Source of the DNA: Malacoraja senta | Lineage: Eukaryota | Assembly: GCA_038087875.1 (NCBI GenBank) | Contig: CM075979.1 | Span: 45,446,001-45,510,000 of the forward strand | DNA: 64,000 bases | Direction: 5' to 3' | Part shown: in pieces, positions 13,210 through 58,781 of the stretch | Layout of the letters: each line of letters starts with the position of its first letter | Position numbering within the stretch: position 1 is the first letter of the stretch | Translations under genes and position numbers: made by a program | Notes under the pieces: model-generated | Seen by the model: the letters and a program-made list of their open reading frames with translations, nothing else | Database searches by the model: none | What the model was told of the DNA's origin: nothing

Positions 13210-13258
13210 ATGAACATTCTGACTCTTTGCAGTGTGGTCTCATTTATTTCAGCATCAG
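13210..13258 (+). CDS. Exon 1, signal peptide [16 protein letters not shown]
   Basis: ATG, hydrophobic core and phase-1 donor G|GTGAAG. It sits in a non-repetitive island and joins in frame to the V exon (S-D-T-L-E). Confidence 0.75.
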
Positions 13259-16200: not shown

Positions 16201-19200
16201 AGAGCAGGGTTCTTGACCCGACAATGAAGGCCCGTTGTGCTGACGGTGTTGCAGGGTCGACCTGGCCAAGTGTAGCCATGATGTTCTCCGCCACTGCTCC
16301 ACCGCTGTAGGCCGCATCCGGTCCACACGCTCCCCATCTTGGAGCGGCACCCAGTCCAACAAAGAGCAAAGAGTAGGAGTGAACGGGTCCTTTTCAGAAT
16401 GGCAGGCAGTGGCGAGTGGAGTGCCGCAAGGCTCGGTGTTGGGGCCGCAACTGTTTACCATATATATTAATGATTTGGAAGAGGGAATTAGGAGCAACAC
16501 TAGCAAGTTTGCGGATGACACAAAGCTGGGTGGCAGTGTGAACTGTGAAGAGGATGTTAGGAGGTTGCAGGGTGACCTGGACAGGTTGACTGAGTGGGCA
16601 GATGCGTGGCAGATGCAGTATAATATAGATAAACGTGAGGTTATCCACTTTGGCGGCAAACACAAGGGGGCAGATTAATTATCTCAATGGGGTTAGGTTA
16701 GGTAAGGGGGAGGTGCAGCGAGACCTGGGCGTCCTTGTCCTTGTACGGTCACTGAAAGTTGGCTTACAGATACAGCAGGCGGTGAAGAAAGCTAATGGAA
16801 TGTTGGCCTTCATAACAAGAGGATTTCAGTATAGGAGTAAAGAGGTTCTTCTGCAGTTGTATAGGGCTCTGGTGAGACCACATCTGGAGTATTGTGTACA
16901 GTTTTGGTCTCCTAATTTGAGGAAGGACATCCTTGTGATTGAGGCAGTGCAGCGTAGGTTCATGAGATTGATCCCTGGGATGGCAGGACTATCATATGAG
17001 AAAAGATTGAAAAGACTAGGCTTGTATTCACTGGAGTTTAGAAGGATGAGGGGATATCTTATAGAAACATATAAAATTATAAAAGGACTGGACAAGCTAG
17101 ATGGCAGGACAAATGTTCCCAATGTTGGGCGAGTCCAGAACCAGGGGCCACAGTCTTAGAATAAAGGGGAGGTCCTTTAAGACAGAGGTGAGAAAATACT
17201 TTTTCACCCAGAGAGTTGTGAATTTATGGAATTCCCTGCCACAGAGGGCAGTGGAGGCCAAATCACTGGATGGATTTAAGAGAGAGTTAAGGGCCTGTCC
17301 CACGGGCATGCGACTCCATGCGGCAAGCGGGACCTAACCGGAAGCGGGGGCCACGCGGGGGCCGCGCGGGGGCCGCACGGGGGCCGCGCGGAGGTCGAGT
17401 GATCCCCGTACAGGGCCGGTCGCACCAGCATGCGGCTGTATGCGGCAAGCGCGACCAAACCGGAAGCGGGGGCCGCGCGGAGGTCAATTGAGTGTCGCGG
17501 GAAGTACGCGACACTCAATTAGTGTGGCGTCAAGACGCTGTGTATGGCGTCGAGACGCTGCGTACGGTGTCGAGGCGCTGCGCACGCCTCGAAACCGTAC
17601 GTATTGCGTCGAAGCGGTGCGTACGGCGTTGAGGCGGGTGTGGGCTGGCAGGCCGTTGCCGCGCGGAATTTTTGAACACGGTCAGTTTTTCGGAGCCCCG
17701 CGCGATGTCAGGACCAGCTCCGCACAAATCCATACGGCTCCCGGCGATCGAAGTGGGACTGGCCCCGCGAGGCCGCACAGCTCAAGCGACCACGTTAGAT
17801 CGCGCTTGCCGCATGGAGTCGCATACCCGTGGGACAGGGCCTTTGGATAGAGCTATAGGGGCTAGTGGAATCAAGGGATATGGGGAGAAGCCAGGCACGG
17901 GTTATTGATAGGGGACGATCAGCCATGATCACAATGAATGGCGGTGCTGGCTTGAAGGGCTGAACGGCCTCCTCCTGTACCTACTTTCTATGTTTCTATG
18001 TTTCTATGTTTCTATGTTTCTATGTTTCTATGTAACCGAGCCCCAGGCTGTTGCAGGGCCTCCAGCGGCCCACTCCTCCATCGAGGCCGTGCACTCCATC
18101 CCGCAGCCCGCATGCTCACCGGCCCTCCTATCAGGGTGGGCTTTTCAGGCGGATTCACGTGGTGTGGGTTCTCGTGTTCCCTGTTCGTGTTCCTGGTCCG
18201 TGGGGTGGGTTCCTGTGTTCCCGATCTGTGGTGTGTTCCCGTGATCCCAGTCCATGTTCCCGTGATCCCAGTCCATGTTCCCATGTTTCCAGTCCGTGGC
18301 ATGTGTTTCCATGTTCCCAGTCCGTGTTCCCGTGTTGCCGGTCCGTGGCATGTGTTTCCGTGTCCCCAGTCCGTGGCATGTGTTTCCGTGTTCCCGGTCC
18401 GTGGCGTGTGTTCCCGTGTTCCCGGTCTGTGGCATGTGTTTCCGTGTTCCCAGTGCATGTTCCCATGTTCCCGGTCCGTGTCATGTGTTTCTGTGTTCCC
18501 AGTCCGTGTCCCCGGTCCATGGCATGTGTTCCCGTGTTCCCGGTCTGTGGCATGTGTTTCCGTGTTCCCAGTGCGTGTTCCCATGTTCCCAGTCCATGGC
18601 GTGTGTTTCCGTGTTCCCCGTCCGTGGCGTGGGTTCACGTGTGGACGCTGACAATGCTTCTCATAACTTTATATACTTTTATCAGGTCATCGGTATATAC
18701 GTCTTTCACAATTAATGTTTTTTATGCTTTTTTTAGATACCTTAGAGCTGGAGATATTTGCAAGTCCACTGATGGTATTTGTAAATGACAATGCGACTCT
18801 GAAATGCATGGTTACTGGGTCTGGAAACATTGACTTAAAAAAGATGGCAGTCAGATGGACCCTTAATGAGAAAACAGAAGTGTTTTCCTTTGAAGGAGGA
18901 ACTAAAGAGCGAAATCGATCTGGTGCCAATATTTCTGAGGCTGAATTACTGAAGGGAAATGCTTCAATTCATCTTCCAAAAGTCCAGATCTCTGACGATG
19001 GAATGTACACATGCACTGTGTTTATCGTTCCTGAAAGTGCCAGTCGCTTTTCAACAATGCACGTGTTAGGTAAGATTAACGATAACGTTCAGGAATATAA
19101 TTCCAAGAAAATGGTTTGGAAGTTTGAAACAAGGATGAACAGGGATTTAGATTCTTAGACCACTGGGATCTGCTTTGGGATAAGGGTGAATTGTACAAAA

Positions 19201-22200: not shown

Positions 22201-25200
22201 TTGCACTAAGCATAATTCCCTTATCATGCATCTGTACACTGTGAATGGCTTGATTGTAATCATGTATTGTCTTTCCACTGACTGGTTAGCACGCAACCAA
22301 AGCATTTGATGTACCTCATCACATGTGACAATAAACTAAAGTGAACTGAAACAGAACTGCCCACAACAGTCTAAATACAGTTGAAACCATGTCCTATGAA
22401 GCTGAATCATGACTTCCTGACTCTTATACTCAATGACCCAACCAATGAATGCAAGCACACCATGTGCCTACTTTATCATATTAATGTCTTCAGATGCTAA
22501 TGGTGCTAACATTCCTAACTCTGATGAAGAGACCCCAGCTTGAAAAAATGACCCTGTTCCATTCCCTGCCAATATTTTGGGACCTGCTTAGTGCTTCCAG
22601 TATTGTCTGCTTTTATTTTCCATCTCCAGCACCTGCAGTCTCTTCCTCTAATATTTAAATGTACATTTTTTAATGCAGCTCGACCAAACGTCAGTATATC
22701 GACACAGTCCATCACAAATGAGAAAGGTTCAGAAGTTTCTCTGACATGCAAAGCCAGTGGATTTTACCCTCGACCGATAAACATCACCTGGGTGAAGATA
22801 ACAGGAAGAAGAAATGTTTCCATGAATAACTATACAACACAAATCACTGCCAATGGTGATCGCACTTTCAATGCTGAGAGTAAACTGAAGATTCACCCGA
22901 CATTGAACGATAATGTTGATCAATACAGATGCGTAGTGAGACATCAAACATTCCTGAATGGTCTCATAATAGAACCTTCTCTCACCGTGCCAGGTGAGTT
23001 GAACACAGTGGGAGAGTCTAGGACCAGAGGCCACAGCCTCAGAATAAAAGGACGCACCTTTAGACAGGAGATGAGGAGGAATTTCTTTAGTCAGATGGTG
23101 GTGAATCTGTGGAATTCATTGCCACAGACGGCTGTGGAGGCCATGTCATTGGGCATTTTTAAGACAAATTGTCAGATTCTTGGTTAGTATGGGTGTTGGG
23201 GTTATGGGAGAAGGTAGGAGATTGGGATTGGGTGGGAAAGATAGATCAGCCATAATTGAAAGATGGAGTAGACTTGATGGGCTGAATGGCCTAATTCTGC
23301 TCCTATCATATGAATTTGAACTTATCTAAGCATTTGGCCCATATCCCTCTAAACGTTTCCTATCCATGTACTGTACAAAAATCGTTTAAATGCTGTTATA
23401 GTACCAGCCCCAACTCCCTCCTCTGGCAGCTGGTTCCATTTACCCACAGCCCTCTGAGTGTGATGTTTCCCCTCAGCTTCCTATTAAATCTTTCCCCACT
23501 CACCTATGTCCCCTGGTTCTTGATTCCCCTTGGCTGGGGGGTAAAAGTATCTGCATCCACCCCATCTATTCCCCTCATTTAAGAATTAAATAATTAGAGG
23601 TGTCAGCCTTTTGTAATGAGCGCTGATGTACATCATCCTTGAATAAAGTGAGGGGTCAGATGTGAAGTGCATCAGGACCCTCAGCTCTGGAGATAACTGC
23701 TTCACTGATGGAGTCAGTGTGTGGCTCAGCGGCAAAATGGATTCAGGGCAATGAGCAGTGTTCCACAGTTGAATCACCACCGGTTCAATGCTTGTCTGGT
23801 TATGTCTGACAAGTCAGGTTCTAGAATATTAATCTAGATACATACAACTTTGCGGATTGCCACATGTCTAGAAACTTGTACATAAAGGACCTCTGGTCAT
23901 TCCCAGAGTCTGGAACAGCACAGAATTGCATCAAGTAGAGTTGCTGCTTCATAGCTCCAGAGACCAGGTTTCAATCCTGACCACGGGTGCCGTCTGTGTG
24001 GAGTTTGCCCATGCTCCCTGTGACCACGTGGGTTTCCTCCAGTTTCCACCAGCATCGCAAGGACATGCAGGATTGTAGGTTAATCGGCCCTCTGTAAATT
24101 GCCGTTAGTAGTGTGGGATAATATAGAACTAGTGTGAACGGGTGATCGATGGTCGGCGTGGTCTTGGTGGGCTTTAGAGTCTGTTCAATCAATTCAATCT
24201 CTCAATTCAATTCAATGCAATTCATCAAATCAAGGATTATTAACACATTCCTGACCATTTAAGTCAATCTATTGCTTCTTTTATTCAAAGTCTGTGCAAT
24301 TTTATATATTTAAAATTTACAACACCCAGAAATCAAATTACGCTTTAATTATAATCTGCATCATGGTGACGATATGTATAATCCTTGGAATCTTAAATGC
24401 TACGGCTGTTTTACACCTGGGAAATAAACACAATAGGTACCATTTATGTACAGAACCTAGAACAGTACAGCACAGGAGCAGGCCCTTCGGCCCACAGTGT
24501 TGAACATGATGCCAAGATAAACTCATGTCCTCTGCCTGTGTGTGGTCCATGTCCCTCCATTCCCTGTATATCCATGTGCCTATTTATAAACCTCCCAAAT
24601 GCCACTATCGTATCTGCATCCACCACACATAGCAGTACATTCTCGGTATCCACTCTCTGTTTAAAAACTTGCCCTGTACATCTCGTTTAAACATTACTCT
24701 TCTCGCCTTAAAACTATGCTCTCCAGATTCTCACTATTACATCCTGGGTAAATATTCTGACTGTCTACCTTATCTATGTCTCTCATAATTCTATATACTT
24801 CCATCAGTTCTCCCCTCCACTTGCGTCATTCCAAAGAAAACAATCCAAATCTGTCCAACCTCTCAGTGTAGCTGATACCCCCTAATCCAAGCAGGCACTC
24901 TGATAACCCTCTTCTGCACCCTTTCCAAAGCCTCCACATCCTTCCTGTTATGGGGTGACCAGAACTACACCAATTCCATAAGGGAATACACCAATCTGGT
25001 AAGTAGAATAAGTTAGTGATACATTCTGTGGAATATTGTACATAAATCAAATTGCTGGAGGAACTCAATGGGTCAGGCAGCATCTGTGGAAGGAATGGAG
25101 AGGTGATGTTCCCGACCATAAACATCGTCTGTTCATTCCCTCCACAGATGCTGCCTGACCCACTGAGTTCCTCCAGCACTTTGTGTTTTGCTCAAGATTC

Positions 25201-46200: not shown

Positions 46201-49200
46201 GACATTAGCTTGGAGGATGTGGAATCGATATGGGTAGAGCTGCGAGACACTAAGGGGCAGAAAACGCTAGTGGGAGTTGTGTACAGGCCACCTAACAGTA
46301 GTAGTGGAGTTGTGGATGGCATCAAACAGGAAATTAGAAATGCGTGCAACAAAGGTAAAACGGTTATAATGGGTGACTTCAATCTACATATAGATTGGGT
46401 GAATCAAATTGGCAGGGGAGCTGAGGAAGAGAATTTCTTGAAATGTATGCGGGATAGTTTTCTAAATCAACATGTAGAGGAACCAACGAGAGAGCAGGCT
46501 ATTCTAGACTGGGTATTGAGTAATAAGGAAGGGTTAGTTAGCAGGCTTGTTGTGCGTGGCCCCTTGGGCAAGAGTGGCCATAATATGGTTGAGTTCTTCA
46601 TTAGGATGGAGAGTGACATAGTTAATTCAGAAACAAGGGTTCTGAACATAAAGAAAGGTAACTTTGAGGGTATGAGACGTGAATTGGCCAAGATAGACTG
46701 GCAATTGATTCTTAAAAGGTTGATGGTGGATATGCAATGGAAGGCATTTAAAGGCTGCATGGATGAACTACAACAATTATTCATCCCAGTTTGGCAAAAG
46801 AATAAATCAGGGAAGGTAGTACATCCATGGATAACAAGGGAAATCAGGGATAGTATCAAAACAAAAGATGAAGCATACAAATTAGCCAGAAAAAGCAGGC
46901 TACCAGAGGACTGGGAGAAATTCAGAGTCCAGCAGAGGAGGATAAAGAGTTTAATTAGGAACAGGAAAATAGATTATGAAAGAAAACTGGCAGGGAACAT
47001 AAAAACTGACTGCAAAAGTTTTTATAGATATGTCAAGAGAAAAAGATTAGTTAAAACAAATGTAGGTCCCTTGCAGTTAGAAACAGATGAACTGATCATG
47101 GGGAACAAGGACATGGCAGACCAATTGAATAACTACTTTGGTTCTGTCTTCACTAAGGAATACTTAATTAATCTGCCGGAAATAGCAGGGGACCGGGGGT
47201 CAAATGAGATGGAGGAACTGAGGGAAATCCAGGTTAGCCGGGAAGTGGTGTTAAGTAAATTGAATGGATTAAAGGCCGATAAATCCCCAGGGCCAGATAG
47301 GCTGCATCCCAGAGTAATTAAGGAAGTAGCCCCAGAAATAGTGGATGCATTAGTGATAATTTTTCAAAACTCTTTAGATTCTGGAGTATTTCCTGATGAT
47401 TGGAGGGGCGGGGGGGGGGGGGGGGGACGAGGGCAGGTATATCTCCACTTTTTTCCTCTTTTTTTTTCCCCTTTTCCTCTCTTATATCTTGATTCACTCT
47501 TTGACCACACTACTTTGGTAGTCTAGGGGTCCTATCTTTTCACCTTTCACTTTTTTCCTCTCTTGTTTTTTCTTTCCTCTTTTCCCTCATTTTCAGGTTA
47601 AAAACTAAAAAAAAACAAAAAACTGTGCCCTCTAGTATTTGTATCTCGTATCCTGAGAAAAAGGTTCTGACTGTCTACCCTATCTATGGCTCTTAGAATT
47701 TTATAAACTATCATGAAAATTCACAAAATGGCACATTATCTGTGTGCAACTCCACATATTCAAATTCAGTTGTTACTCTTTGTGTGCTCTGCTCTTTAAA
47801 ATCTTTTTTTCCACCTGCAAGTGTAGATCTTTTAAATCTTATTTTCTTCCTGTAAGTATAGAACTATATTCTGCACTTCATCTTCCCCTTTGACTTGATT
47901 GTATTTATGGCTGGTACACCTGATCTGGTGGGATTGCTGCAAAACGAAGCTTTTCACTGTACCTCGGTACATGTGACAATAATCAACCTGAAGCTAAACC
48001 ACATGATTTTACTAGAATAAAGATCTTCTGCCATGAGACACAAGTGCAGATGCTGAATTGTTTCAATCTATATTCCCTGGGTTGACAGAGAGGCATTTTG
48101 TCCAGTGTGAATATCCCAGAATTGTTCATTCTGAAGTCTAGTAAACATTTGGCTTGTAGCAGGGATGGGATAGTCATAGAGTCACAGAGTGATACAGTGT
48201 GGAAACAGGTACTTTGGCCCAACTTGCCCACACTGGTCAACATGTCCCAGCTACGCTAGTCCCAACTGCCTGCGCTTGGTCCCTATCCCTCCAAACTTGT
48301 CCTATCCATGTATCTGTCTAACAGTTTCTCAAACGATAGTAACAGCCTCAACTACCTCCTCTGGCAGCATGTTCCATACACCCACCACCCTTTGTATGAA
48401 AAAGTTATGCCACAGATTCCTATTAAATCTATTCCCCTTCACCTTAAACCTATGTACATAGAGTCCCAGCCTACTCAACCTCTGCTTATAGCTCTGACTC
48501 TCTACTACTGGCAACATCCTTGTAAATCTTCTATGTTCCCTTTCCAGCTTGACAACATCTTTTCTATAACACGGTGCCAAGAACTGAACACAATACTCTA
48601 AATGTGGCCTCACAAACGGCTTCTACAACCTCATCTTGTCTTCCCAACTTCTATACTCAATACTCCGGCTGATGAAGGCCAATGTGTCAAAAGTCGTGTA
48701 TGTTCTCATCCAAATCATTGATATAGATGACAAACAGTAACGGGCGCAGCACCGAACCCTGAGGCATACCACTAGTCACAGGTCTCCAGTCTGAGAAGCA
48801 ACCTTCCACCATCACCCTCTGCTTTCTTCCATGAAGCCAATTTGCTATCCATTCAGCTATCTCTCCTTGGATCCCATGCGATCTAACCTTCCAGAGCAGC
48901 CTACCATGCAAAACTATTTCGAATGCCTTTCTGAAATCCATGTAAGATCTGTGGAATTTTGATGTCTGGTGATGTATTTAACTAAATAACAATTGTACGT
49001 AACCTTTGCAGCAGCAACATGCAGATCTTTAGTCAGGTTAAGGTTTCTCTTTTGTGCTCCTAAAATGTTGGTGGGAATCTACAAAAGTTCGAGACCTGCG
49101 ATCCAGCTTCTCGGAATGTGTTGGGATACCTTATCTCAGGCAGTGTTGGCATTATTACATGTGAGACTCCTCTCGAAAGGTTACCTATCCATGTTCTCCA

Positions 49201-52200
49201 GAGATGCAAACCTGACCCACCGAGTTACTCCAGCACTTTGTGCCCATGTTTATGTAAACCAGCATCTACGGTTCATTGTGTTTTCCACCACCTGCTTCAT
49301 CCATCATTGAATGGCAGTGAATACTGATGGGCTGAATGGCCTAATTCTGCTCCAAGAACGTACGAACTTCAGGTCAATTCTGCATCCTATACTAATCCAA
49401 TTCTCTATTCCCCTTCATATACTTATACAAACTCGTTGCATTCTCCTTAATCTTCTCAGCCAAAGTGATCTCATGCCTTCTCTTCGTCGTTCCAATTTCC
49501 TTCTGAAGTAACTCCGACATCCCGATGCTCCTCCAGGGATTCACGTGATCCCAGCTCTTCTTCTTGGCCCATGCCTCTTTTTCTCCAGCCAGAACCACAA
49601 TATCTCTTGTATTCCAGGCTTCCCCAGTCCATGCCGACCAGTGATCCCCATACATAGCACCATCCCACACATCAGGGACAAAGCCAATTGACCAACAAAC
49701 CTGTATGTCTATGGAGTGCGGGAGCAAACCGGAGCAACCGGAGAAAACCCACGCAGTCACGGGGAGAACGTACAAACTCCATACAGACAGCGTCCATAGT
49801 CAGAATCGATCCCGGGTCACTGGGACTGTAAGGCAACAACTCATCCACTGCTCCAATGTGCCATTCCTAATTTGCTTTTGGTAAAATTGTAAATAGTCAT
49901 TAATGTGTAGGATAGTGTTAGTGTACAGTGTGATCACTGGTCGGCGCGGACTCGGTGGGCCGAAGGGCTGTGTCTCTAAAGTCAAAAGACAAATGAGGTT
50001 CATAATGAAGAAGTGTTGAAGGTATTTTATGCAGGAGTGAGATACAGATCCTTCGGCAGATGAAGCCTTCACTGTGGGGAATAATAATAAAGTTCCTTGA
50101 GGTGTGATCCATCTTCTCACATACCTTGTCTCTGGTTATGTTGCCATTATCACATTTGAGAGACTTTATTTTATTTAAATGCAGTGCCCAAGTCAGATGC
50201 TGCCATGGGGAGTTGTGTTGAAGGTGAACAACAGACAGAGAGGCAGGATACCCAAAATGCAGGAGCAAGTGAAGGTAAGGCATTTCTCAAAGCATCCAGA
50301 GTATCGTTGCCCTTTCAGTGACATTTGATGTCCAACCATTGTCTCCAGACTGTACATGATTCATATTTAGTTAATTCCTGCTAATATTATATACAATATT
50401 CAGGTCAATGCTCAAATATGTGGAATTTTATGTTTGGGACTATATGCATTCAAGTTCAGTTGTTGTCACCGTGCTGTGTTTTAATACAGCGCCGGATTCA
50501 GATGTCGCTACAAGAATTCTTGATGAAGGTAAAATGGAAAAAGAGAATCTGGGAAATCAAAGTGCAGGAAAACAGGAAGGTAATGCTTTTGCTGAAATAT
50601 TGAATATAAAATAGTACAGCACAGGAACAGGCCCTTCTGCCCACAATATCTGTGCTAAACATGATGCCAAGACCTTCAATTCACTGCCTGCACATAACCC
50701 ATATCCCTCCATTCCCAGCATAACCTGCCCAGCACATAGTCATAGTCACAGAGTATTAGATAGAGTGTGGAAACAGGTCCTTCGGCTCAACTTGCCCACA
50801 CGGCCAACATGTCCCAGCTACACTAGTCGCACCTGCCAGCGCTTGGTCCATATCCCCCCAAACCTGTCCTATCCATGTACCTGTCTTACTGTTTCTCAAA
50901 TGATGGGACAGTCAAAACCTCAACTACCTCCTCTGATGGCTTGTTCCACACACCCACCACCCTTTGTGTGAAAAAGTTTCCCCTCCGATTCCTCTTAAAT
51001 CTTTTCCCCTTCACCTTGAACCTATGTCCTCTGGTCCTCGATTCCCCTACTCTGGGCAAGAGACTGTGTGCATCTACCTATTCCTCTCATGAGGCTGGGA
51101 ATAGAGTCCCAGCCTACTCAACCTCTCCCTATAGCTCACACCCTCTAGTCCCAGCAACATGCTCATAAAGCTTTTCTGAACCCTTTCAAGCTTGACAATA
51201 TCTTTCCTATAACATGGTGCCCAGAACTGAACACGGGATTATTATGACGATTTAATTCAATTTATAAATCTTTCTATTCTTCAATTCTACAGCTGCGCAA
51301 ATACTTAGCAGAGAAAATAATTTTCAAATGTTTTAAATTTTCAAGCATGTTGCTGTGAACATGATTTAAAACGTGTGAGCAGGCAGATGGAAACATTATT
51401 TCTTGTTATACAGCCAAGTTCAGATATCAAGCATGCTCTTTCAATATTTGGAATGGTGTCCATCCTTGCCAAGAGAAGTAAAGAATTATTTTGTAGACAC
51501 AAGAGACTACAGATGTTCGAATGTTGAGCAAAAAGTAAAGTGCTGGAGCAACTCAGCGGGTCAGGCAACATCTGTAGTGGGAATAGACCAATGACGTTTC
51601 AGATCAGGACCCATCTTCAGACTCAAGTCTGAAACGTCGTCTGTCCCTTCCCTCCATAGATCCTCCCTCTGAGCTCCTCCACCACTTTGCTTTCTGCTGA
51701 AGAATTATTTTTCATAATGGACTTAACATTACCAACAAACTGTAACTTCTGTCCAGGAATTGGAACAGGAAGGACCATTATGTTCAGCACAGACATTGTG
51801 GACTGAAGGACCTGTTTCCACCATGCATCATTTTATGACTCTATGACCCTACATAGATCAGTACAGTACAAGAACAGGCCCTTCAGTCCACAATGTCCGT
51901 GCTGAACATGATGCCAAGACCGGCTCTTATCTATAATCCATCTCCCTCCATTCCCTGCATATCCACGTGCCTGTCAAAAAGTCTCTTAAACACCACTATC
52001 ATATCCGCCTCCACCACCACCCCTGGCAGTGCGTTCCAGGCACTCAACACCCTCTGAGCAAAAAACGTTGCCATGCACATCTGCTTTAAACTTTACCCCT
52101 CTCACCCTAAACCGATGCCCTCTAATATTTGACATTTTCATCCTGGGGTAAAATGTTCTGACTGTCTACCCTGTCTATGCCTCTCATCATTTTATATACT

Positions 52201-55200
52201 TCCATCAGATCTCCCCTCAACCTCTGGCGTTCCAGAGAAAGATATATTGTCCAGAAAGCTGGAATTGATCTGTGTATTTTTATACTTTTTAAACTGGCAC
52301 CTGGTCAGCTTGTTTCCTGGCTAATTGTCTTGTTTATGTTGTTCAGGACAGGTAAATACAACGGACGATGAAGACCCAAACCGTACACCACTTATCGCCA
52401 AGACGGGCTCACAAACTGATTATGGTAATTACATATATCGAATACAAGATTCCCATTCTTCCCATGACACTTTGAACACACACAATTAGATGAAGTTTTA
52501 AACCAAGTTTAGAAACATTAGCACAAAACCACAGGTGCTGTCTGTATGGAGTTTGCACGTTCTCTCTGTGGCTGTGCGGGTTTTCTCCATGTTCATAGGT
52601 TATAGGTGCATAACTTGGCCATTCATAATCAAAGAGTCATACAGTGATACAACTTGGAAACAGGCCCTTCAGCCCACCTTACCCACACCGGCCAACATGT
52701 GCCAGCTACATTAGTCCCACCAACCTGCGTTTGACCCATATTCCTCCAAATCTGTCCAATCCATGTATCTGTCTAACTGTTTCTTAAACAATGGGATAGT
52801 CCCAGCATCATCCTCGTAAATCTTCTCTGTACCCTCGCCAGCTTGACGACATCTTTCCTATAATATGGTGCCCAGAACTGAACACAATACTCTAAATGCA
52901 GCCGCTCCAACGTCTTATACAACTGCAACATGACCTCCCAACTTCTATACTCAATTCTTTGACTGATGAAGGCCAGTCTGTCAAATGCCTTTTTGACCAA
53001 ACGTTCTACCTGCGACTCCACCTTCAAGGAACCAAGAGAAACAGTAACAGGCCCAGCACCGAACCCTGAGGCACACCAGTAGCCACAGGCCTCCAGTCTG
53101 AGGAACAACCTTCCACCATCAACTTCTGCTTCATTCCTTGAAGCCAATTTACAGCTATCTCTCCTTGGATCCCATACGATCTAACCTTCCAGAGCAGCCT
53201 ACCATGTGGTACCTTGTTCAATGCTTTGTTGAAGTTCATATATACAACAACTGCAACTCTGCCCTCATCGACCTTTTTGGTCACGTCTTCAAAAGACTCA
53301 ATCAGATTTGTGAGGCACGACCTCCCACGTACAAAACCAGAGTGATGTATTTAACTAAATAACAGTTGTATGTAACTTTTGCAGCAGCAACATGCAGATC
53401 TTTGGTCAGTTTAAGGCTTCTCTTTTGAGCTCTTAAAATGTTGGTGGGAAACTACAAAGATCGAGTCCTATGATCCAGCTTCTCGGAATGTGTTGGGATA
53501 CCTTATCTCATGCAGTGTTGGCATCATTACATGTGAGACTTCTACTTGTGTTTTAATACAGCTTCGGATTCAGATGTCATCACAGGAAGTCGCGATGAGG
53601 GTGAAAGGCAAGCAATGAATCTGGAAAATCAATGTGCAGGAAAATGGGAAGGTAATGCTTTTACTGAAACATCAAGTCAACTTTATTTGTTACATACACA
53701 TACAAGATGTCCAGTGAAATGAGAGTGGCAATGCTTGTGGGATTGTGCAAAACAACAGAAAAGAACAGAACAGATCCAGTATTTACATTTAAAAAAGTAG
53801 ATGCAACAGCATTTACGCCCTGGTGAGACCAGAGTTTACAGACCTAATGGCCTGTGGGAAGAAACTCTGTCTCATCCTCTCTGTTTTCGCAGTGTGACAG
53901 CGGAGGCGCTTGCCTGACCGCAGCTGGAACAGTCCGTTGCTGGGGTGGTAGGGGTCCTTCATGATCCTGCTAGCTCTGGATCTGCACCTCCTGGTGTATA
54001 GGTCCTGAAGGAGGGGGGGGGGTGTAGTTCCCGTGGTGCGTTCGGCAGAACACACTACTCTGTCTGCAGACTGTACATGATTCATATTTAGTTAATCCCT
54101 GCAAATATTATATACAATATTCAGGTCAATGCTCAAATATGTGGAATTTTATGTTTGGGACTACATGCATTCAAGTTCAGTTGTTGTCACCGTGCTGTGT
54201 TTTAATACAGCGCCGGATTCAGATGTCGCAACAAGAATTCTTGATGAAGGTAAAATGGAAAAAGAGAATCTGGGAAATCAAAGTGCAGGAAAACAGGAAG
54301 GTAATGCTTTTGCTGAAATATTGAACATAAAACAGTACAGCACAGGAACAGGCCCTTCTGCCCACAATATCTGTGCTAAACATGATGCCAAGACCATCAA
54401 TTCACTGCCTGCACATAACCCATATCCCTCCATTCCCAGCATATCCGTGTGTCTAGCCAAAAGCCTCTTAAACGCCACTATCGTATCAGCCTCGACCACT
54501 ACCTGGCAGCGTGTTCCAGTCACCCACCACCCACCACCCACTGTGTCTAAAACCTGCCCAGCACATAGTCATAGTCACAGAGTATTAGATACAGTGTGGA
54601 AACAGGTCCTTCGGCTCAACTTGCCCACACGGCCAACATGTCCCAGCTACACTAGTCGCACCTGCCAGCGCTTGGTCCATATCCCCCCAAACCTGACCTA
54701 TCCATGTACCTGTCTTACTGTTTCTCAAATGATGGGACAGTCAAAACCTCAACTACCTCCTCTGATGGCTTGTTCCACACACCCACCACCCTTTGTGTGA
54801 AAAAGTTTCCCCTCCGATTCCTCTTAAATCTTTTCCCCTTCACCTTGAACCTATGTCCTCTGGTCCTCGATTCCCCTACTCTGGGCAAGAGACTGTGTGC
54901 ATCTACCTATTCCTCTCATGAGGCTGGGAATAGAGTCCCAGCCTACTCAACCTCTCCCTATAGCTCACACCCTCTAGTCCCAGCAACATGCTCATAAAGC
55001 TTTTCTGAACCCTTTCAAGCTTGACAATATCTTTCCTATAACATGGTGCCCAGAACTGAACATGGGATTATTATGACGATTTAATTCAATTTATAAATCT
55101 TTCTATTCTTCAATTCTACAGCTGCGCAAATACTTAGCAGAGAAAATAATTTTCAAATGTTTTTAATTTTCAAGCATGTTGCTGTGAACATAATTTAAAA

Positions 55201-58200
55201 CGTGTGAGCAGGCAGATGGAAACATTATTTCTTGTTATACAGCCAAGTTCAGATATCAAGCATGCTCTTTCAATATTTGGAATGGTGTCCATCCTTGCCA
55301 AGAGAAGTAAAGAATTATTTTGTGGACACAAGAGACTACAGATGTTGGAATGTTGAGCAAGAAGTAAAGTGCTGGAGCAACTCAGCGGGCCAGGCAACAT
55401 CTGTAGTGGGAATAGACCAATGACGTTTCAGATCAGGACCCATCTTCAGACTCAAGTCTGAAACGTTGACTGTCCCTTCCCTCCATAGATCCTCCCTCTG
55501 AGCTCCTCCACCACTTTGCTTTCTGTTGAAGAATTATTTTTCATAATGGACTTAACATTACCAACAAACTGTAACTTCTGTCCAGGAATTGGAACAGGAA
55601 GGACCATTATGTTCAGCACAGACATTGTGGACTGAAGGACCTGTTTCCACAATGCATCATTTTATGACTCTATGACTCTACATAGATCAGTACAGTACAA
55701 GAACATGCCCTTCATTCCCCAATGTCCGTGCTAGACATGATGCCAAGACCGGCTCTTATCTATAATCCATCTCCCTCCATTCCCTGCATATCCACGTGCC
55801 TGTCACAAAGTCTCTTAAATGCCACTATCATATCCGCCTCCACCACCACCCCTGGCAGTGCGTCCCAGGCACTCAACACCCTCTGTGTAAAAAATGTTGC
55901 CATGCACATCTTCTTTAAACTTTACCCCTCTCACCCTAAACCGATGCCCTCTAATATTTGACATTTTCATCCTGGGGTAAAATGTTCTGACTGTCTACCC
56001 TGTCTATGCCTCTCATCATTTTATATACTTCCATCAGATCTCCCCTCAACCTCTGGCGTTCCAGAGAAAGATATATTGCCCAGAAAGCTGGAATGGATCT
56101 GTGTATTTTAATACTTTTTAAACTGGCACCTGGTCAGCTTGTTTCCTGGCTAATTGTCTTGTTTATGTTGTTCAGGACAGGTAAATACAACGGACGATGA
56201 AGACCCAAACCGTACACCACTTATCGCCAAGACGGGCTCACAAACTGATTATGGTAATTACATATATCGAATACAAGATTCCTATTCTTCCCACGACACT
56301 TTGAACACACACAATTAGATGAAGTTTTAAACCAAGTTTAGAAACATTAGCACAAAACCACAGGTGCTGTCTGTATGGAGTTTGCACGTTCTCTCTATGG
56401 CTGTGCGGGTTTTCTCCATGTTCATAGGTTATAGGTGCATAACTTGGCCATTTATAATCAAAGAGTCATACAGTGATACAACTTGGAAACAGGCCCTTCA
56501 GCCCACCTTACCCACACCGGTCAACATGTCCCAGCTACATTAGGCCCACCAACCTGCGTTTGACCCATATTCCTCCAAATCTGTCCAATCCATGTATCTG
56601 TCTAACTGTTTCTTAAACATTGGGATAGTCCCAGCATCATCCTCATACATCTTCTCTGTACCCTCGCCAGCTTGACGACATCTTTCCTATAATATGGTGC
56701 CCAGAACTGAACACAATACTCTAAATGCAGCCGCACCAACGTCTTATATAACTGCAACATGACCTCCCAACTTCTATACTCAATTCTTTGACTGATGAAG
56801 GCCAGTCTGTCAAATGCCTTTTTGACCAAACTTTCTACCTGCGACTCCACCTTCAAGGAACCAAGAGAAACAGTAACAGGCCCAGCACCGAACCCTGAGG
56901 CACACCAGTAGCCACAGGCCTCCAGTCTGAGGAACAACCTTCCACCATCAACTTCTGCTTCATTCCTTGAAGCCAATTTACAGCTATCTCTCCTTGGATC
57001 CCATACAATCTAACCTTCCAGAGCAGCCTACCATGTGGTACCTTGTTCAATGCTTTGTTGAAGTTCATATATACAACAACTGCAACTCTGCCCTCATTGA
57101 CCTTTTTGGTCACGTCTTCATAGATACATAGATACATAGAAAATAGGTGCAGGAGTAGGCCATTCGGCCCTTCGAGCCTGCACCGCCATTCAATATGATC
57201 ATGGCTGATCATCCAACTCAGTATCCCGTACCTGCCTTCTCTCCATACCCCCTGATCCCCTTAGCCACAAGGGCCACATCTAACTCCCTCTTAAATATAG
57301 CCAATGAACTGGCCTCAACTACCCTCTGTGGCAGAGAGTTCCAGAGATTCACCACTCTCTGTGTGAAAAAGTTTTCCTCATCTCGGTCTTAAAGGATTTC
57401 CCCCTTATCCTTAAGCTGTGACCCCTTCTCTGCACTCCCTCTATGGCTATAATGTCCTTCCTCAGATTTGGAGACCAAAACTGTACGCAATACTCCAGGT
57501 GTGGTCTCACCAAGACCCTGTACAACTGCAGTAGAACCTCCCTGCTCCTATACTCAAATCCTCTTGCTATGAAGGCCAACATACCATTCGCTTTCTTCAC
57601 TGCCTGCTGCACCTGCATGCCTACTTTCAATGACTGGTGTATCATGACACCCAGGTCTCGCTGCATCTCCCCATTTCCTAATCGGCCACCATTTAGATAA
57701 TAGTCTGCCTTCCCGTTTTTGCCACCAAAGTGGATAACCTCACATTTATCCACATTATACTGCATCTGCCAAACATTTGCCCACTCACCCAGCCTATCCA
57801 AGTCACCTTGCAGTCTCCTAGCATCCTCCTCACAGCTAACACTGCCCCCCAGCTTAGTGTCATCCGCAAACTTTGAGATGTTGCTTTCAATTCCCTCGTC
57901 CAGATCATTAATATAAATTGTAAATAGCTGGGGTCCCAGCACTGAGCCTTGCGGTACCCAATTAGTCACTGCCTGCCATTGTGAAAAGGACCCGTTTACT
58001 CCTACTCTTTACTTCCTGTTTGCCAGCCAGTTCTCTATCCACATCAATACTGAACCCCCGATACCGTGTGATTTAAGTTTGTATCCTAATCTCTTATGTG
58101 GTACCTTGTCGAAAGCCTTCTGAAAGTCCAGATACAACACATCCACTGATTCTCCCCTATCCACTCTACTAGTTACATCCTCGAAAAATTCTATAAGGTT

Positions 58201-58781
58201 CGTCAGACACGATTTACCTTTCGTAAATCCATGCTGACTTTGTCCAATGATTTCACCACTCTCCAAATGTGCTGCTATCCCATCTTTAATAACTGACTCT
58301 AGCAGTTTCCCCACTACCGATGTTAGACTAACTGGTCTGGAATTCCCCGTTCTCTCTCTCCCTCCCTTCTTAAAAAGTGGGGTTACGTTTGCTACCCTCC
58401 AATCCTCTTCAATACCCTTCAAAAGACTCAATCAGATTTGTGAGGCACGACCTCCCACGTACAAAACCAGAGTGATGTATTTAACTAAATAACAGTTGTA
58501 TGTAACTTTTGCAGCAGCAACATGCAGATCTTTGGTCAGTTTAAGGCTTCTCTTTTGAGCTCTTAAAATGTTGGTGGGAAACTACAAAGATCGAGTCCTA
58601 TGATCCAGCTTCTCGGAATGTGTTGGGATACCTTATCTCATGCAGTGTTGGCATCATTACATGTGAGACTTCTACTTGTGTTTTAATACAGCGTCGGATT
58701 CAGATGTCATCATAGGAAGTCCCGATGAGGGTGAAAGGCAAGCAATGAATCTGGAAAATCAATGTGCAGGAAAATGGGAAG
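13210..58781 (+). CDS. NCR3LG1: B7-H6 / NCR3LG1-like type I membrane IgSF gene (leader-V-C1-TM-long modular cytoplasmic tail); 3' end not certain in window
   Basis: Join of 13210-13258, 18737-19069, 22679-22993, 25296-25397, 25634-25711, 30093-30515, 31626-31715, 31931-32020, 39968-40057, 50185-50274, 50490-50579, 52347-52424, 53562-53651, 54211-54300, 56176-56253, 58692-58781. All junctions are AG/GT and phase 1, with no stops (~725 codons if all are used). The symbol denotes family resemblance only; orthology was not tested. Confidence 0.8.
13365..13652 (-). mobile_element. tRNA-derived V-SINE-type element (similar copies at ~23930-24225 +, ~31060-31300 -, ~49680-49870 -)
   Basis: Conserved core (c)gtacggagtttgtacattctccctgtgactgcgtgggttttctcc on the - strand, with an (aaact)n-type tail. 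Confidence 0.7.
14692..15157 (-). mobile_element. Penelope-like 3' fragment
   Basis: Shares aatgttcat...ctgcccaagcg.aa.atgagg...cctccaa...ggaggaggcccaggacag with 6230-6600. Confidence 0.75.
16365..18032 (+). mobile_element. 5'-truncated CR1 LINE interrupted by a MITE, with (ctatgttt)n tail
   Basis: Frameshifted RT ORFs 16379-17337. The 3' end resumes at 17846. Tail at 17985-18032. Confidence 0.9.
17290..17842. mobile_element. PIF/Harbinger-type MITE inserted in CR1
   Basis: TIRs AGGGCCTGTCCCACGGG / CCCGTGGGACAGGGCCT and TSD TTA/TTG at the host site gagTTAgatag. Confidence 0.88.
18160..18640. repeat. Compound minisatellite (units such as gtgttcccagtccgtggcatgtgtttcc)
   Basis: Directly visible. 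It explains the spurious Cys/Thr-rich ORFs in all six frames. Confidence 0.93.
18737..19069 (+). CDS. NCR3LG1: Exon 2, IgV domain, B7-H6-like
   Basis: ttttttag| acceptor and G|GTAAG donor. Reads NDNATLKC...VRW...[33 protein letters not shown] with canonical C-W-C and DxGxYxC, and several N-glycosylation sequons. Confidence 0.95.
19140..20525 (+). mobile_element. CR1 fragment (ORF1 end, endonuclease part of ORF2), 3'-truncated
   Basis: ORFs 19498-20351: [22 protein letters not shown]. Confidence 0.85.
20900..21690 (-). mobile_element. Rex/L2-type LINE 3' fragment (host of the RTE insertion)
   Basis: - strand ...[45 protein letters not shown], which is paralogous to the C-terminus of the element at 26101. 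Confidence 0.6.
20990..21248 (+). mobile_element. RTE-clade LINE 3' end
   Basis: Manual translation ...[29 protein letters not shown] (RTE C-terminal zinc finger), followed by a short UTR and (CAA)n tail. Confidence 0.85.
22679..22993 (+). CDS. NCR3LG1: Exon 3, IgC1 domain
   Basis: aatgcag| acceptor and G|GTGAGT donor. Reads [17 protein letters not shown]...[12 protein letters not shown]...YRCVVRH (C1-set signature). Confidence 0.95.
25296..25397 (+). CDS. Exon 4, transmembrane [34 protein letters not shown]
   Basis: ttttaacag| acceptor and G|GTAAAC donor, phase 1-1. Hydrophobic helix with GxxxG followed by a basic stop-transfer KKKCK. Confidence 0.9.
25634..25711 (+). CDS. Cytoplasmic 78-nt exon T1, [26 protein letters not shown]
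   Basis: ttgttcag| acceptor and G|GTAATT donor. Open, phase 1-1, with conserved copies at 52347 and 56176. Confidence 0.8.
26013..26079 (+). pseudogene. Truncated pseudo-exon of the 90-nt family (acceptor deleted)
   Basis: Matches the 3' two-thirds of the exons at 53562 and 58692 including the donor, but is fused upstream to SINE sequence at AGTCCC. Confidence 0.85.
26101..28785 (-). mobile_element. Rex-Babar/L2-type LINE, 5'-truncated, decayed
   Basis: ORF 26497-27231 has [31 protein letters not shown] and [15 protein letters not shown]; endonuclease remnants run to ~28790. 8-bp TSD TGAAACAT at 26093-26100 and 28786-28793. Confidence 0.88.
30093..30515 (+). CDS. Cytoplasmic exon encoding a divergent Ig-like domain lacking the canonical cysteines (141 aa)
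   Basis: tctttcag| acceptor and G|GTAATA donor. 423 nt open, phase 1-1, unique sequence. [18 protein letters not shown] resembles [19 protein letters not shown] of the C1 exon. The Ig-fold call is by eye. Confidence 0.75.
31626..31715 (+). CDS. 90-nt cytoplasmic exon A1, [30 protein letters not shown]
   Basis: aaatgcag| acceptor and G|GTAAG donor; open, phase 1-1. Confidence 0.8.
31931..32020 (+). CDS. 90-nt cytoplasmic exon B1, [30 protein letters not shown]
   Basis: tttaatacag| acceptor and G|GTAATG donor; open, phase 1-1. Confidence 0.8.
33563..37442 (+). mobile_element. L1 (LINE-1) element, 5'-truncated, ORF2 with a single stop, inserted in the Gypsy RNase H
   Basis: ORFs 33538-34968 and 34984-37023 are in the same frame (EN: GGDFN, SDH; RT: [22 protein letters not shown]; C-terminal Cys motif). 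Poly(A) tail and 10-bp TSD AGAAAGGACA (33553-33562, 37443-37452). Confidence 0.95.
38004..38610 (+). mobile_element. Second L1 3' fragment (ORF2 end and pyrimidine-rich UTR)
   Basis: Sequence paralogous to the L1 ORF2 end at 36680-37020 ([12 protein letters not shown]...IIFG, then KFWK..IP..MWIS.M..T.HLEE). Confidence 0.75.
38611..38760 (+). repeat. Internal duplicate of the Gypsy 5' host flank plus partial LTR
   Basis: tgttcgacaggtacatggacaggtttggagggatat|TGTGACAATATCC... repeats 32598-32745. Confidence 0.9.
39968..40057 (+). CDS. 90-nt cytoplasmic exon B'', [30 protein letters not shown]
   Basis: tttaatacag| acceptor and G|GTAATG donor; open, phase 1-1. Confidence 0.8.
40729..41676 (+). 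CDS. CR1 ORF1 (zinc finger plus SGNH esterase), intact 315 aa
   Basis: CSAC...CRKC, GDSIVR, HIGTND and DGLHL motifs. Confidence 0.93.
   Translation: MSVEIGPVVCSACNIWEIRDMVGVPGDYVCRKCVQLQLLADRIERLELRLDSYWSIHDAEKVVNSTYSELVTPQVKGKRTEREQVANSQHSSRQVVQESPAVISLLNRYTILDTVGGDGSSGEGSSSQVHGTMGGSAAKEGRKKSGRAIVIGDSIVRGIDRRFCGHKRDSRMVCCLPGARVTDVTERLQNILEGEGEQPVVVVHIGTNDIGKKRVEVLQGEFRELGDKLKSRTSKVIISGLLPVPRASQSRNRRILQMNTWLEKWCKGEGFKFLGHWNQFWGRWDQYKQDGLHLGWNGTNVLGGVFASAVGEDLN
41676..44660 (+). pseudogene. CR1 ORF2 (APE endonuclease plus RT), one in-frame TAG at 43095-43097
   Basis: ORFs 41676-43097 and 43098-44660 are contiguous in frame. The paralogue near 47210 reads GSNEMEEL where this copy reads GLN*MEEL. 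Confidence 0.93.
45032..47622 (+). mobile_element. Composite retro-insertion: L1 ORF2 piece / CR1 ORF1 end / CR1 ORF2 5' half / L1-like 3' UTR with A-tail
   Basis: 10-bp TSD CTGTGCCCTC at 45022-45031 and 47623-47632 flanks all four segments. Confidence 0.8.
50185..50274 (+). CDS. 90-nt cytoplasmic exon A2, [30 protein letters not shown]
   Basis: aaatgcag| acceptor and G|GTAAG donor; open. Confidence 0.75.
50490..50579 (+). CDS. 90-nt cytoplasmic exon B2, [30 protein letters not shown]
   Basis: ttaatacag| acceptor and G|GTAATG donor; open. Confidence 0.75.
51293..51336 (+). CDS. Candidate terminal coding exon [14 protein letters not shown] (duplicate at 55122-55198 reads 11 codons further)
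   Basis: Good acceptor tctttctattcttcaattctacag| in a non-repetitive island, and phase-1 reading reaches a stop. There is no independent support. Confidence 0.3.
52347..52424 (+). CDS. 78-nt cytoplasmic exon T2, [26 protein letters not shown]
   Basis: gttcag| acceptor and G|GTAATT donor; open; paralogue of 25634. Confidence 0.7.
53562..53651 (+). CDS. 90-nt cytoplasmic exon B'2, [30 protein letters not shown]
   Basis: ttttaatacag| acceptor and G|GTAATG donor; open. Confidence 0.7.
53673..54060 (-). mobile_element. 3' end of the Rex/L2 LINE, cut by the tandem-duplication junction
   Basis: Same as 26101-26500 and 58803-59199. Confidence 0.88.
54211..54300 (+). CDS. 90-nt cytoplasmic exon B3, [30 protein letters not shown]
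   Basis: Splice sites intact; one synonymous difference from B2. Confidence 0.7.
56176..56253 (+). CDS. 78-nt cytoplasmic exon T3 (identical to T2)
   Basis: Splice sites intact; open. Confidence 0.7.
57121..58410 (-). mobile_element. Young 5'-truncated CR1 present only in duplication unit 2
   Basis: RT ORFs 57349-58431 and tail at 57121. The empty site gtcttca|aaagactc is seen at ~53290. One internal deletion at ~57424. Confidence 0.9.
58692..58781 (+). CDS. 90-nt cytoplasmic exon B'3, [30 protein letters not shown]
   Basis: Splice sites intact; open. Confidence 0.7.

What the first reader, a model, noticed from the sequence alone, without database searches (positions are those of the whole stretch)
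13210..58781. B7-H6-like receptor-ligand with a ~460-aa modular cytoplasmic tail built from 12 symmetric exons
Seen: a standard leader-V-C1-TM ectodomain followed by 12 open phase 1-1 exons of three kinds (78 nt x3, 423 nt x1, 90 nt x8) spread over 33 kb of repeats. Established: B7-family tails are usually short. Inference: an immune ligand whose intracellular part is expanding by exon duplication, where any subset of exons can be skipped in frame, giving combinatorial tail isoforms and copy-number alleles. This is the best candidate for an undescribed system here.
Basis: partly seen in the sequence, partly recalled or inferred. Interest (0 to 1): 0.9.

Follow-up and report, generated by a model that had tools for sequence, protein, structure and literature searches.

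The report
B7-H6-like gene with modular Ig tail
This skate gene encodes an immune-ligand-like surface protein (related to human B7-H6) whose unusually long inner tail is assembled from duplicated small exons, including an antibody-like domain that seems to sit inside the cell. It belongs to an old shark, ray and amphibian family for which I found no published description.

Summary
On the + strand, leader, V-set, C1-set and TM exons are followed by twelve AG/GT-bounded phase-1 exons (3x78, 1x423, 8x90 nt). They read through 725 codons without a stop. The frame is still open at 58781, and the duplication pattern shows the array runs past the window end.

The true TM exon is 25296-25397, not the hydrophobic ORF at 24330.

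The 423-nt exon folds (AF2 pLDDT 88) as an Ig-like sandwich. It is derived from the family's C1 domain and has lost the canonical disulfide.

The same V-C1-TM-[Ig-like]n-acidic-repeat layout occurs in 'uncharacterized' RefSeq models of 15 cartilaginous-fish species. Amphibians have a version with C1-like tail domains. One relative is an uninterrupted RNA contig. The family's ectodomain profile hits human B7-H6 best.

Tail exons lie in segmental duplications that are 90-98% identical, and their number differs between species. Within a species the tails look alike, while the ectodomains keep old lineages.

Two things are not shown: that this gene's mRNAs use all twelve exons, and that the tail is cytoplasmic.

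The scan had already flagged five sister genes elsewhere in this genome. I found no paper describing the tail.

The parts
13210..13258 (+). Leader exon: ATG plus a 16-residue hydrophobic signal peptide, with a phase-1 donor (CAG|gtgaag)
18737..19069 (+). IgV exon (333 nt, phase 1-1)
   Evidence: Pfam V-set E 1.3e-8. Best PDB hits are CD276 at 8.5e-19 and B7-H6 at 4e-11. It carries every invariant residue of the family V alignment.
22679..22993 (+). IgC1 exon (315 nt, phase 1-1)
   Evidence: Pfam C1-set E 2.5e-14. PDB hits: UrIg2 6.5e-15, B7-H6 4.6e-12. It carries every invariant residue of the family C1 alignment.
25296..25397 (+). Transmembrane exon (102 nt, phase 1-1): about 23 hydrophobic residues followed by KKKCK
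   Evidence: It is 58% identical in protein to the TM of Rhinoraja P0002. An RNA-library contig of X1 ends exactly at its two borders.
25634..25711 (+). 78-nt tail exon a (acidic stretch plus a PLI motif)
26013..26079 (+). Dead remnant of an S-type 90-nt exon: the 3' 64 nt plus the donor, with no acceptor and a 3-nt insertion
30093..30515 (+). 423-nt exon: a 140-aa Ig-like domain without the canonical disulfide
   Evidence: AF2 pLDDT 88, pTM 0.83. Z 11-12 to V-type Ig domains. hhalign to the family's own C1 domain gives 95% probability. Homologues found.
31626..31715 (+). 90-nt acidic exon K1
31931..32020 (+). 90-nt acidic exon P1
39968..40057 (+). 90-nt acidic exon P2
50185..50274 (+). 90-nt acidic exon K2 (copy of K1, 96.7% identical)
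50490..50579 (+). 90-nt acidic exon P3 (copy of P1)
52347..52424 (+). 78-nt tail exon b
53562..53651 (+). 90-nt acidic exon S1
54211..54300 (+). 90-nt acidic exon P4 (98.9% identical to P3)
56176..56253 (+). 78-nt tail exon c (identical to b)
58692..58781 (+). 90-nt acidic exon S2, the last exon in the window. The reading frame is still open here.
49174..64000 (+). Segmentally duplicated tail block. It repeats parts of 25443-32160 at 90-97% identity and contains an internal 3.8-kb tandem at 98%. It runs off the window end.

Best explanation
This is one gene of a clustered multigene family of B7-H6-like type I membrane proteins in a skate.

Shown:
- A signal peptide, an IgV domain, an IgC1 domain and one TM helix are followed, in a single phase-locked reading frame, by a tail of at least 459 aa.
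- The tail is built from three exon kinds: a 78-nt acidic linker exon, a 423-nt exon encoding an Ig-like domain, and 90-nt acidic exons.
- The Ig-like domain is derived from the C1 set. It has lost both canonical cysteines (Trp replaces the B-strand Cys, Ile/Val replaces the F-strand Cys) and gained an insert of about 35 aa that gives it a V-like topology.
- The array grew by segmental duplication and continues beyond the window.

Inferred:
- The ectodomain is displayed as a ligand for an NKp30/CD28-type receptor.
- The tail lies in the cytoplasm, as alternating folded Ig-like modules and polyanionic disordered spacers.
- Because every exon is symmetric (phase 1-1), skipping and unequal crossing-over change tail length in frame. 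This would produce isoforms and species-specific copy numbers.
- Tails are kept alike among paralogues within a genome by gene conversion or unequal exchange, while the ectodomains diverge.

What the tail binds is unknown.
For: Exon anatomy and open frame.

Domain identities.

Family ectodomain profile against solved structures: B7-H6 142 bits, CD276 4-Ig 129, 2-domain CD276 chains about 65-66, TAPBPR 94, PD-L1 61.

Same architecture in RefSeq models of Heterodontus, Rhinoraja, Scyliorhinus, Stegostoma, Mobula, Hemitrygon, Heptranchias, Cetorhinus, Mustelus and Callorhinchus, with 1-8 tail Ig-like domains.

The Rhinoraja gene has the same 102/78/429/90-nt AG/GT exons.

The Leucoraja isoform X7 model strings the end of the 423-nt exon to 11 exons of the 90-nt type.

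All 28 further relatives from amphibians and elasmobranchs, plus Heterodontus P0043 and the RNA-contig protein P0046, have one TM at about residue 90-300 (87 in one N-terminally short model) followed by hundreds of residues of tail, over 700 aa in most, matched by Ig-family Pfam models.

L002 is a 2754-nt RNA-run contig with an uninterrupted V-C1-TM-Ig-tail ORF.

An X1 RNA-library contig stops exactly at both TM-exon borders. X1/X16 contigs cover the 423-nt exon but not the unique intron.

Duplications.

Tail follows species while ectodomain follows lineage. In S. torazame, paralogues A and B are 49% identical in the ectodomain and 94% in the tail. The window versus Rhinoraja is 40% versus 80%.
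Against: No read or contig joins two exons of this particular gene. The RNA contigs are only 90-97% identical to the window, so they come from a paralogue or another species.

The tail exons show no short-range purifying selection. dN/dS against Rhinoraja is 0.83, and exon identity (about 90%) equals intron identity. Between copies inside the window there are 26.8 non-synonymous and 4.2 synonymous changes.

No terminal exon or stop codon lies in the window.

Cytoplasmic topology is inferred only from the signal peptide, the single TM and the positive-inside KKK.

Most relatives are computational gene models.
Confidence: 0.7

Rival explanations
1. Only the proximal tail exons (78a, 423, K1, P1, perhaps P2) are used. 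The distal block at 49-64 kb is a young, silent partial duplication whose exons look intact only because they are recent.
For: Distal copies are 90-98% identical to proximal ones, with near-neutral or excess non-synonymous change. One copy is already dead. Introns are filled with young LINEs. No RNA contig was seen on the 90-nt exon K1 (31626-31715), and only a trace (depth 2.9) on P1.
Against: No stop codon or terminal exon lies between P2 and the distal block, so a transcript must go on somewhere. All distal copies keep both splice sites and an open frame. The Leucoraja and Rhinoraja models use six to eleven 90-nt exons.
Confidence: 0.3
2. The gene models fuse two transcription units: a short-tailed B7-like gene and a separate downstream gene for a cytosolic protein made of Ig-like and acidic repeats.
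For: Tail-only RefSeq models exist (P0004, P0005, P0014 isoform X7). Phase 1-1 Ig-type exons are easily chained by gene predictors.
Against: The TM and 78-nt exons have no in-frame stop and end in phase 1, only 236 nt apart. The RNA contig L002 carries V-C1-TM and tail Ig domains in one ORF. The same junction is modelled in 30 proteins of about 25 species.
Confidence: 0.08
3. The main product skips the TM exon and is secreted, so the 'tail' Ig-like domains are extracellular.
For: Heterodontus isoform X3 lacks exactly the TM exon, in frame. Some Callorhinchus and caecilian tail domains keep both canonical cysteines.
Against: The TM exon is conserved and present in nearly all models. Most tail domains have lost the disulfide pair, which fits a reducing compartment.
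Confidence: 0.12
4. This copy is a decaying pseudogene within a live family.
For: The ectodomain sits on a long branch in the tree (0.64). Tail evolution is near-neutral. No RNA from this exact copy was seen.
Against: There are 725 codons without a stop, 16 canonical splice-site pairs, an intact signal peptide, and all invariant V, C1 and tail-domain residues.
Confidence: 0.1

Closest known systems
Human B7-H6 (NCR3LG1), ligand of NKp30
   Same: Signal peptide, IgV, IgC1 and a single TM. It is the best-scoring solved structure for the family's ectodomain profile. Its tail is also unusually long for a B7 protein (about 170 aa; from my own knowledge).
   Different: From my own knowledge, the human tail is a single gag-like stretch with ITIM/SH2/SH3-type motifs. 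Here the tail has no such tyrosine motifs (3 Tyr, none conserved) and is made of Ig-like modules plus acidic repeats encoded by many symmetric exons. Orthology and NKp30 binding were not tested.
'Uncharacterized protein' RefSeq models of sharks, rays and chimaera (for example Rhinoraja XP_078271721, Heterodontus XP_067902348, S. torazame XP_072322181)
   Same: Same architecture, and a homologous 140-aa tail domain (43-80% identity, E down to 1e-200 for the multi-copy proteins). The Rhinoraja gene has the same exon sizes and phases.
   Different: Numbers of tail domains (1-8) and of acidic exons differ. The acidic repeats differ in sequence between lineages. This window is the only batoid among the lineage-B ectodomains sampled.
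Amphibian and elasmobranch 'hemicentin-1-like / NCR3LG1 partial' proteins of about 1000-1100 aa (for example Geotrypetes LOC117352186)
   Same: V-C1-TM followed by an Ig array. In the one amphibian tested (Geotrypetes P0049), the first tail domain matches the skate tail-domain profile at E 2e-19.
   Different: Their tails are roughly six more canonical C1-like domains without acidic exon repeats.
Chicken BG and butyrophilin genes
   Same: From my own knowledge, these are B7-related IgV(-C)-TM proteins whose cytoplasmic tails are encoded by many small in-frame exons. Exon number and splicing vary between genes and haplotypes. BTN3A1 senses ligands with its intracellular domain.
   Different: BG and BTN use 21-nt heptad exons that form a coiled coil, and/or a B30.2 domain. 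Neither is present here: exons are 78, 90 and 423 nt, and no B30.2/SPRY hit appears in the precomputed Pfam lists for the relatives returned.
Intracellular Ig-like domains of titin, obscurin and filamin
   Same: Ig-fold modules that function in the cytoplasm without a disulfide.
   Different: Those are I-set or filamin-type modules of cytoskeletal proteins, not C1-derived domains attached to a receptor tail.

Membership tests
B7 family, B7-H6 (NCR3LG1)-like | Signal peptide, IgV, IgC1 and a single TM (type I layout) | tested here: met
B7 family, B7-H6 (NCR3LG1)-like | Ectodomain closest in sequence to B7-H6 rather than to other B7/Ig proteins | tested here: met
   Family profile: B7-H6 142 bits over both domains, 2-domain CD276 chains about 65-66, TAPBPR 94, PD-L1 61. 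For the window's V domain alone, CD276 scores above B7-H6.
B7 family, B7-H6 (NCR3LG1)-like | Orthology to bony-vertebrate B7-H6 by phylogeny with other B7 members | not tested
   The word-based searches returned no reference B7 sequences from bony vertebrates apart from the amphibian relatives. Only a within-family tree was made.
B7 family, B7-H6 (NCR3LG1)-like | Binds NKp30 | not testable with these tools
   This needs a binding assay.
Chondrichthyan B7-H6-like family with a post-TM Ig-like array | Homologous 140-aa tail domain directly downstream of V-C1-TM | tested here: met
Chondrichthyan B7-H6-like family with a post-TM Ig-like array | Tail exons all symmetric (phase 1-1) with conserved sizes | tested here: met
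   Window. Rhinoraja locus.
Chondrichthyan B7-H6-like family with a post-TM Ig-like array | Tail exons joined to V-C1-TM in mRNA | tested here: inconclusive
   Shown for a distant relative (RNA contig L002) and in RefSeq models. No junction was found for this gene.
Ig C1-set (for the 423-nt exon domain) | Ig beta-sandwich fold | tested here: met
   AF2 pLDDT 88. Z 11-12 over 108-117 residues to Ig V-type domains.
Ig C1-set (for the 423-nt exon domain) | Profile homology to C1-set domains | tested here: met
   hhalign against the family's own C1 domain: 95% probability, E 3e-8. Against the V domain: 8%.
Ig C1-set (for the 423-nt exon domain) | Canonical B-F disulfide, and a match to the Pfam C1-set model | tested here: not met
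   B-strand Cys is replaced by Trp22 and F-strand Cys by Ile/Val. No Pfam family matches at E up to 1.
Chicken BG / butyrophilin type tails | 21-nt heptad exons forming a coiled coil, or a B30.2 domain | tested here: not met
   Exon sizes are 78, 90 and 423 nt. No B30.2/SPRY appears in the precomputed Pfam lists of the relatives returned.

The most novel reading that the evidence does not exclude
The post-TM Ig-like modules are an intracellular sensing or docking array. They would bind cytosolic partners (stress or pathogen products, or a species-specific adaptor) and control how the B7-H6-like ectodomain is shown to NKp30-type receptors, much as the B30.2 domain does for BTN3A1. Exon duplication, in-frame skipping and within-genome homogenisation would tune the array. 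This would be a new class of inside-out immune ligand dating to the jawed-vertebrate ancestor.
Probability: 0.12. Interest if true: 0.9.

Novelty: new variant of a known kind. Interest (0 to 1): 0.65.

Why it matters
B7-H6/NKp30 is one of the oldest NK-type ligand-receptor pairs and is known to expand in cold-blooded vertebrates. If these ligands really carry arrays of Ig-fold domains on the cytoplasmic side, two things follow. First, a canonical extracellular fold was moved by exon shuffling (all exons are phase 1-1) into the cytosol and adapted there, losing its disulfide and filling the core with Trp. Second, the ancestral B7-H6 tail had a structured function that mammals lost.

The locus is also a clear case of a protein region evolving by exon-level birth-and-death and concerted evolution, while the adjoining ectodomain keeps lineages older than the shark-ray split.

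Tried and rejected
- The hydrophobic ORF at 24330-24410 was considered as the TM exon. It was rejected because entry in phase 1 from C1 gives a non-hydrophobic frame.
- Pfam on the 423-nt exon gave no hit. The weak PH_29, ZP-C and other hits on relatives have no individually significant stretch and were discarded.
- RNA evidence is thin. X12 and X17 cover introns too and are DNA. X8 and X22 are flagged as probably DNA. X1 and X16 gave only sparse 90-97% identical contigs and no exon-exon joint for this gene.
- The look-up of encoding contigs for the Leucoraja isoform P0014 found nothing on record.
- The two papers most likely to describe shark and Xenopus B7H6 tails (PMC3709836, PMC4594805) are not held. 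Four full-text searches found no description of Ig-like tail domains.
- A tyrosine-motif search of the tail found only one Yxx-hydrophobic site, inside a beta strand and not conserved.
- dN/dS was used to look for constraint. Short-range values are near neutral, so this neither proves nor disproves function.
- A phylogeny against other B7 members could not be built, because no reference sequences were obtainable through the tools.
Full report
OBSERVATION

There are three 78-nt exons (25634, 52347, 56176), one 423-nt exon (30093-30515) and eight 90-nt exons (31626, 31931, 39968, 50185, 50490, 53562, 54211, 58692). All have pyrimidine-rich acceptors and gtaa-type donors.

Upstream lie:
- a leader exon (13210-13258: ATG, hydrophobic signal, phase-1 donor);
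- a V exon (18737-19069);
- a C1 exon (22679-22993).

Pfam calls these two V-set (1.3e-8) and C1-set (2.5e-14).

The hydrophobic ORF at 24330 that looks like a TM segment is a decoy, because entry in phase 1 gives another frame. The real TM exon is 25296-25397 (102 nt, phase 1-1). It encodes about 23 hydrophobic residues followed by KKKCK, and lies 236 nt upstream of the first 78-nt exon.

Joined in order, the 16 exons give 725 codons with no stop. The ectodomain plus TM is 266 aa, with 8 N-glycosylation sequons ahead of the TM. The tail is 459 aa, with 87 acidic and 41 basic residues. The frame is still open at 58781, so twelve tail exons is a lower bound.

HOW THE ARRAY AROSE

Self-comparison shows the tail exons lie in nested segmental duplications:
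- 25443-26019 matches 52156-52719 and 55985-56548 at 90%. This block holds the 78-nt exon.
- 30629-32160 matches 49174-50725 at 90%. This block holds K plus P exons.
- 39744-40078 matches 53339-53672 and 58469-58802 at 90%.
- 50722-53291 matches 54551-57120 at 98%.
- 26013-29144 matches 58718-61844 at 96%, and 29227-29648 matches 63580-64000 at 97%.

The last pair means the window ends about 0.4 kb before the place where a second 423-nt exon is expected. One copy is already dead: at 26013-26079 only the 3' two thirds of an S-type exon and its donor survive. The introns are packed with LINEs, several with long open frames.

THE TAIL BELONGS TO A FAMILY

An exhaustive HMMER search with the 140-aa product of the 423-nt exon found 21 proteins. 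The strong hits are all 'uncharacterized' or misnamed RefSeq/UniProt predictions from cartilaginous fishes:
- Heterodontus, 1515 aa, seven nearly identical copies of the domain;
- Rhinoraja, 691 aa, 78% identity;
- Scyliorhinus, Stegostoma, Mobula, Hemitrygon and Heptranchias;
- Callorhinchus, up to eight diverged copies.

Full-length members read V-C1-TM, then a short acidic exon, the Ig-like domain (once or repeated), and acidic low-complexity repeats. The Rhinoraja locus (L001) has the same 102-, 78-, 429- and 90-nt AG/GT exons. It has two Ig-like exons and one 78-nt exon, against one (plus one expected) and three here.

The Leucoraja isoform X7 model begins in the end of the 423-nt exon (97% identical to the window) and strings 11 exons of the 90-nt type to a terminal exon.

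Heterodontus isoforms differ by exactly one 26-aa (78-nt) exon. One isoform lacks exactly the TM exon. This is model-level support for in-frame skipping.

WHAT THE 423-NT EXON ENCODES

With a 35-sequence family alignment, AlphaFold2 gives a confident beta sandwich (pLDDT 88, pTM 0.83). Foldseek and VIA-align match it to V-type Ig domains (antibody and TCR V, MPZ, Nav beta subunits) at Z 11-12 over 108-117 residues. Language-model features point the same way.

A profile-profile comparison ties it to the family's own C1 domain (95% probability, E 3e-8) and not to the V domain (8%). The A-B-C and E-F-G strands align. About 35 residues are inserted between C and E.

The canonical cysteines are replaced: Trp22 on strand B, Ile/Val on strand F. 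Some chimaera copies still have the B-strand Cys. So this is a C1-derived Ig-like domain without a disulfide. That is what one would expect if it works in the reducing cytosol.

A WIDER FAMILY

Ectodomain searches brought in more elasmobranch members, a caecilian protein and a Logan RNA contig. A search with the caecilian tail then found about 1000-1100-aa proteins in frogs, salamanders, caecilians and three elasmobranchs.

All 30 proteins scanned — the 28 hits with strong E-values in that search plus Heterodontus P0043 and the RNA-contig protein P0046 — have a single TM helix. It lies at about residue 226-296 in 29 of them, and at 87 in one N-terminally short model. It is followed by hundreds of residues of tail, over 700 aa in most, matched by Ig-family Pfam models. 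The first tail domain of the caecilian protein matches the skate tail profile at 2e-19.

L002, a 2754-nt contig from an RNA run, carries V-C1-TM and tail Ig domains in one uninterrupted ORF. It is therefore a spliced mRNA, not a prediction.

IS IT B7-H6-LIKE?

The window's V domain alone scores best with CD276 and next with B7-H6. Its C1 scores best with UrIg2 and IgA, and then B7-H6.

A profile of 16 family ectodomains scores human B7-H6 first over both domains (142 bits). CD276 4-Ig follows at 129, 2-domain CD276 chains at about 65-66, TAPBPR at 94 and PD-L1 at 61. NCBI names a chimaera member and a frog member NCR3LG1-like. So 'B7-H6-like' is fair. Orthology and NKp30 binding remain untested.

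LINEAGES AND CONCERTED EVOLUTION

A maximum-likelihood tree of V-C1 resolves three elasmobranch lineages. The window groups with S. torazame P0003 and Mustelus P0048 (support 100/98), away from the Rhinoraja gene.

Yet the window's TM exon, tail exons and flanking introns are about 90% identical in DNA to the Rhinoraja gene, while the V and C1 exons do not align at all at the DNA level.

Protein identities show the same pattern. In S. torazame, lineages A and B are 49% identical in the ectodomain but 94% in the tail domain. Same-lineage proteins of different species are 52-76% identical in the ectodomain but 40-64% in the tail. Tails therefore track the species and ectodomains track the lineage. 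I read this as gene conversion or unequal exchange among clustered paralogues.

The scan's own notes place five more B7-H6-like genes with post-TM Ig arrays in this genome. One lies 44 kb upstream and three lie 190-308 kb downstream. I did not check those loci.

WHAT IS NOT SHOWN

RNA evidence for this copy is thin.
- X12 and X17 cover introns and are DNA.
- X1 and X16 (RNA libraries) have low-depth contigs inside the 423-nt exon (96-97% identical). They have none on unique intron and none on exon K1.
- One 197-nt X1 contig matches exactly the TM exon from border to border (90.6% identical), with 72 and 19 unmatched letters on its two sides. That is the signature of a spliced paralogue or orthologue.
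- No exon-exon joint of this gene was seen.

The tail exons show no short-range constraint. dN/dS against Rhinoraja is 0.83, and exon identity equals intron identity. Between copies in the window there are 26.8 non-synonymous and 4.2 synonymous changes, which is not significantly different from neutral. Deep conservation of the domain core (V24, I34, R40, F49, W51) shows that the fold is maintained over long times.

Topology rests on the signal peptide, the single TM and the KKK motif. A TM-skipped, secreted form is possible.

VERDICT

This is one member of an ancient, clustered family of B7-H6-like proteins that, as far as I could find, is undescribed in the literature (the two most relevant papers are not held). 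The post-TM region is built from Ig-like modules and acidic spacers. In this skate it is being remodelled by exon-level duplication.

Noticed in passing
window 24886-32215 compared with L001 (Rhinoraja), and S. torazame P0003 compared with P0033: Tails (exons and introns) follow the species while ectodomains follow ancient lineages. In one shark, ectodomains are 49% identical and tail domains 94%. V/C1 DNA cannot be aligned between the two skate genes although the TM and tail DNA is about 90% identical. This points to concerted evolution of tail modules among paralogues.
   Followed up: partly
window 17985-18642: A GC-rich minisatellite (units of 21, 28, 49 and 118 nt, about 650 bp) ends about 95 nt upstream of the V-exon acceptor, inside intron 1. 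It produces long spurious ORFs on both strands.
   Followed up: partly
window 24330-24410: A 25-residue hydrophobic ORF preceded by an AG mimics a TM exon, but it is out of phase with C1. The real TM exon is 0.9 kb downstream.
   Followed up: yes
window 26013-26079: A 5'-truncated remnant of a 90-nt acidic exon. The donor is kept, the acceptor is lost, and there is a 3-nt insertion. This is direct evidence of exon death in the array.
   Followed up: yes
window 33538-37023: An AT-rich (about 30% GC) L1-like LINE with two long open frames (476 and 679 aa: endonuclease/RT) sits in the intron between P1 and P2. It looks young.
   Followed up: no
window 40729-44660 and 45063-47526: Two CR1-type LINE copies (94% identical over 1.6 kb) lie in the intron. 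The first has three long open frames (315, 473 and 520 aa). A related copy is 91% identical in the Rhinoraja locus.
   Followed up: no
P0024 (Heterodontus isoform X3): This RefSeq isoform skips exactly the TM exon in frame. It predicts a secreted form in which the tail Ig-like domains would be extracellular.
   Followed up: partly
78-nt exons (25634, 52347, 56176) and their shark counterparts: The short linker exon keeps an acidic cluster followed by a Leu-Leu/Ile pair (skates ...TPLI..., Heterodontus ...DRSLL..., Heptranchias ...KPLL...). This resembles acidic dileucine sorting signals, but the spacing is not canonical in most species.
   Followed up: no
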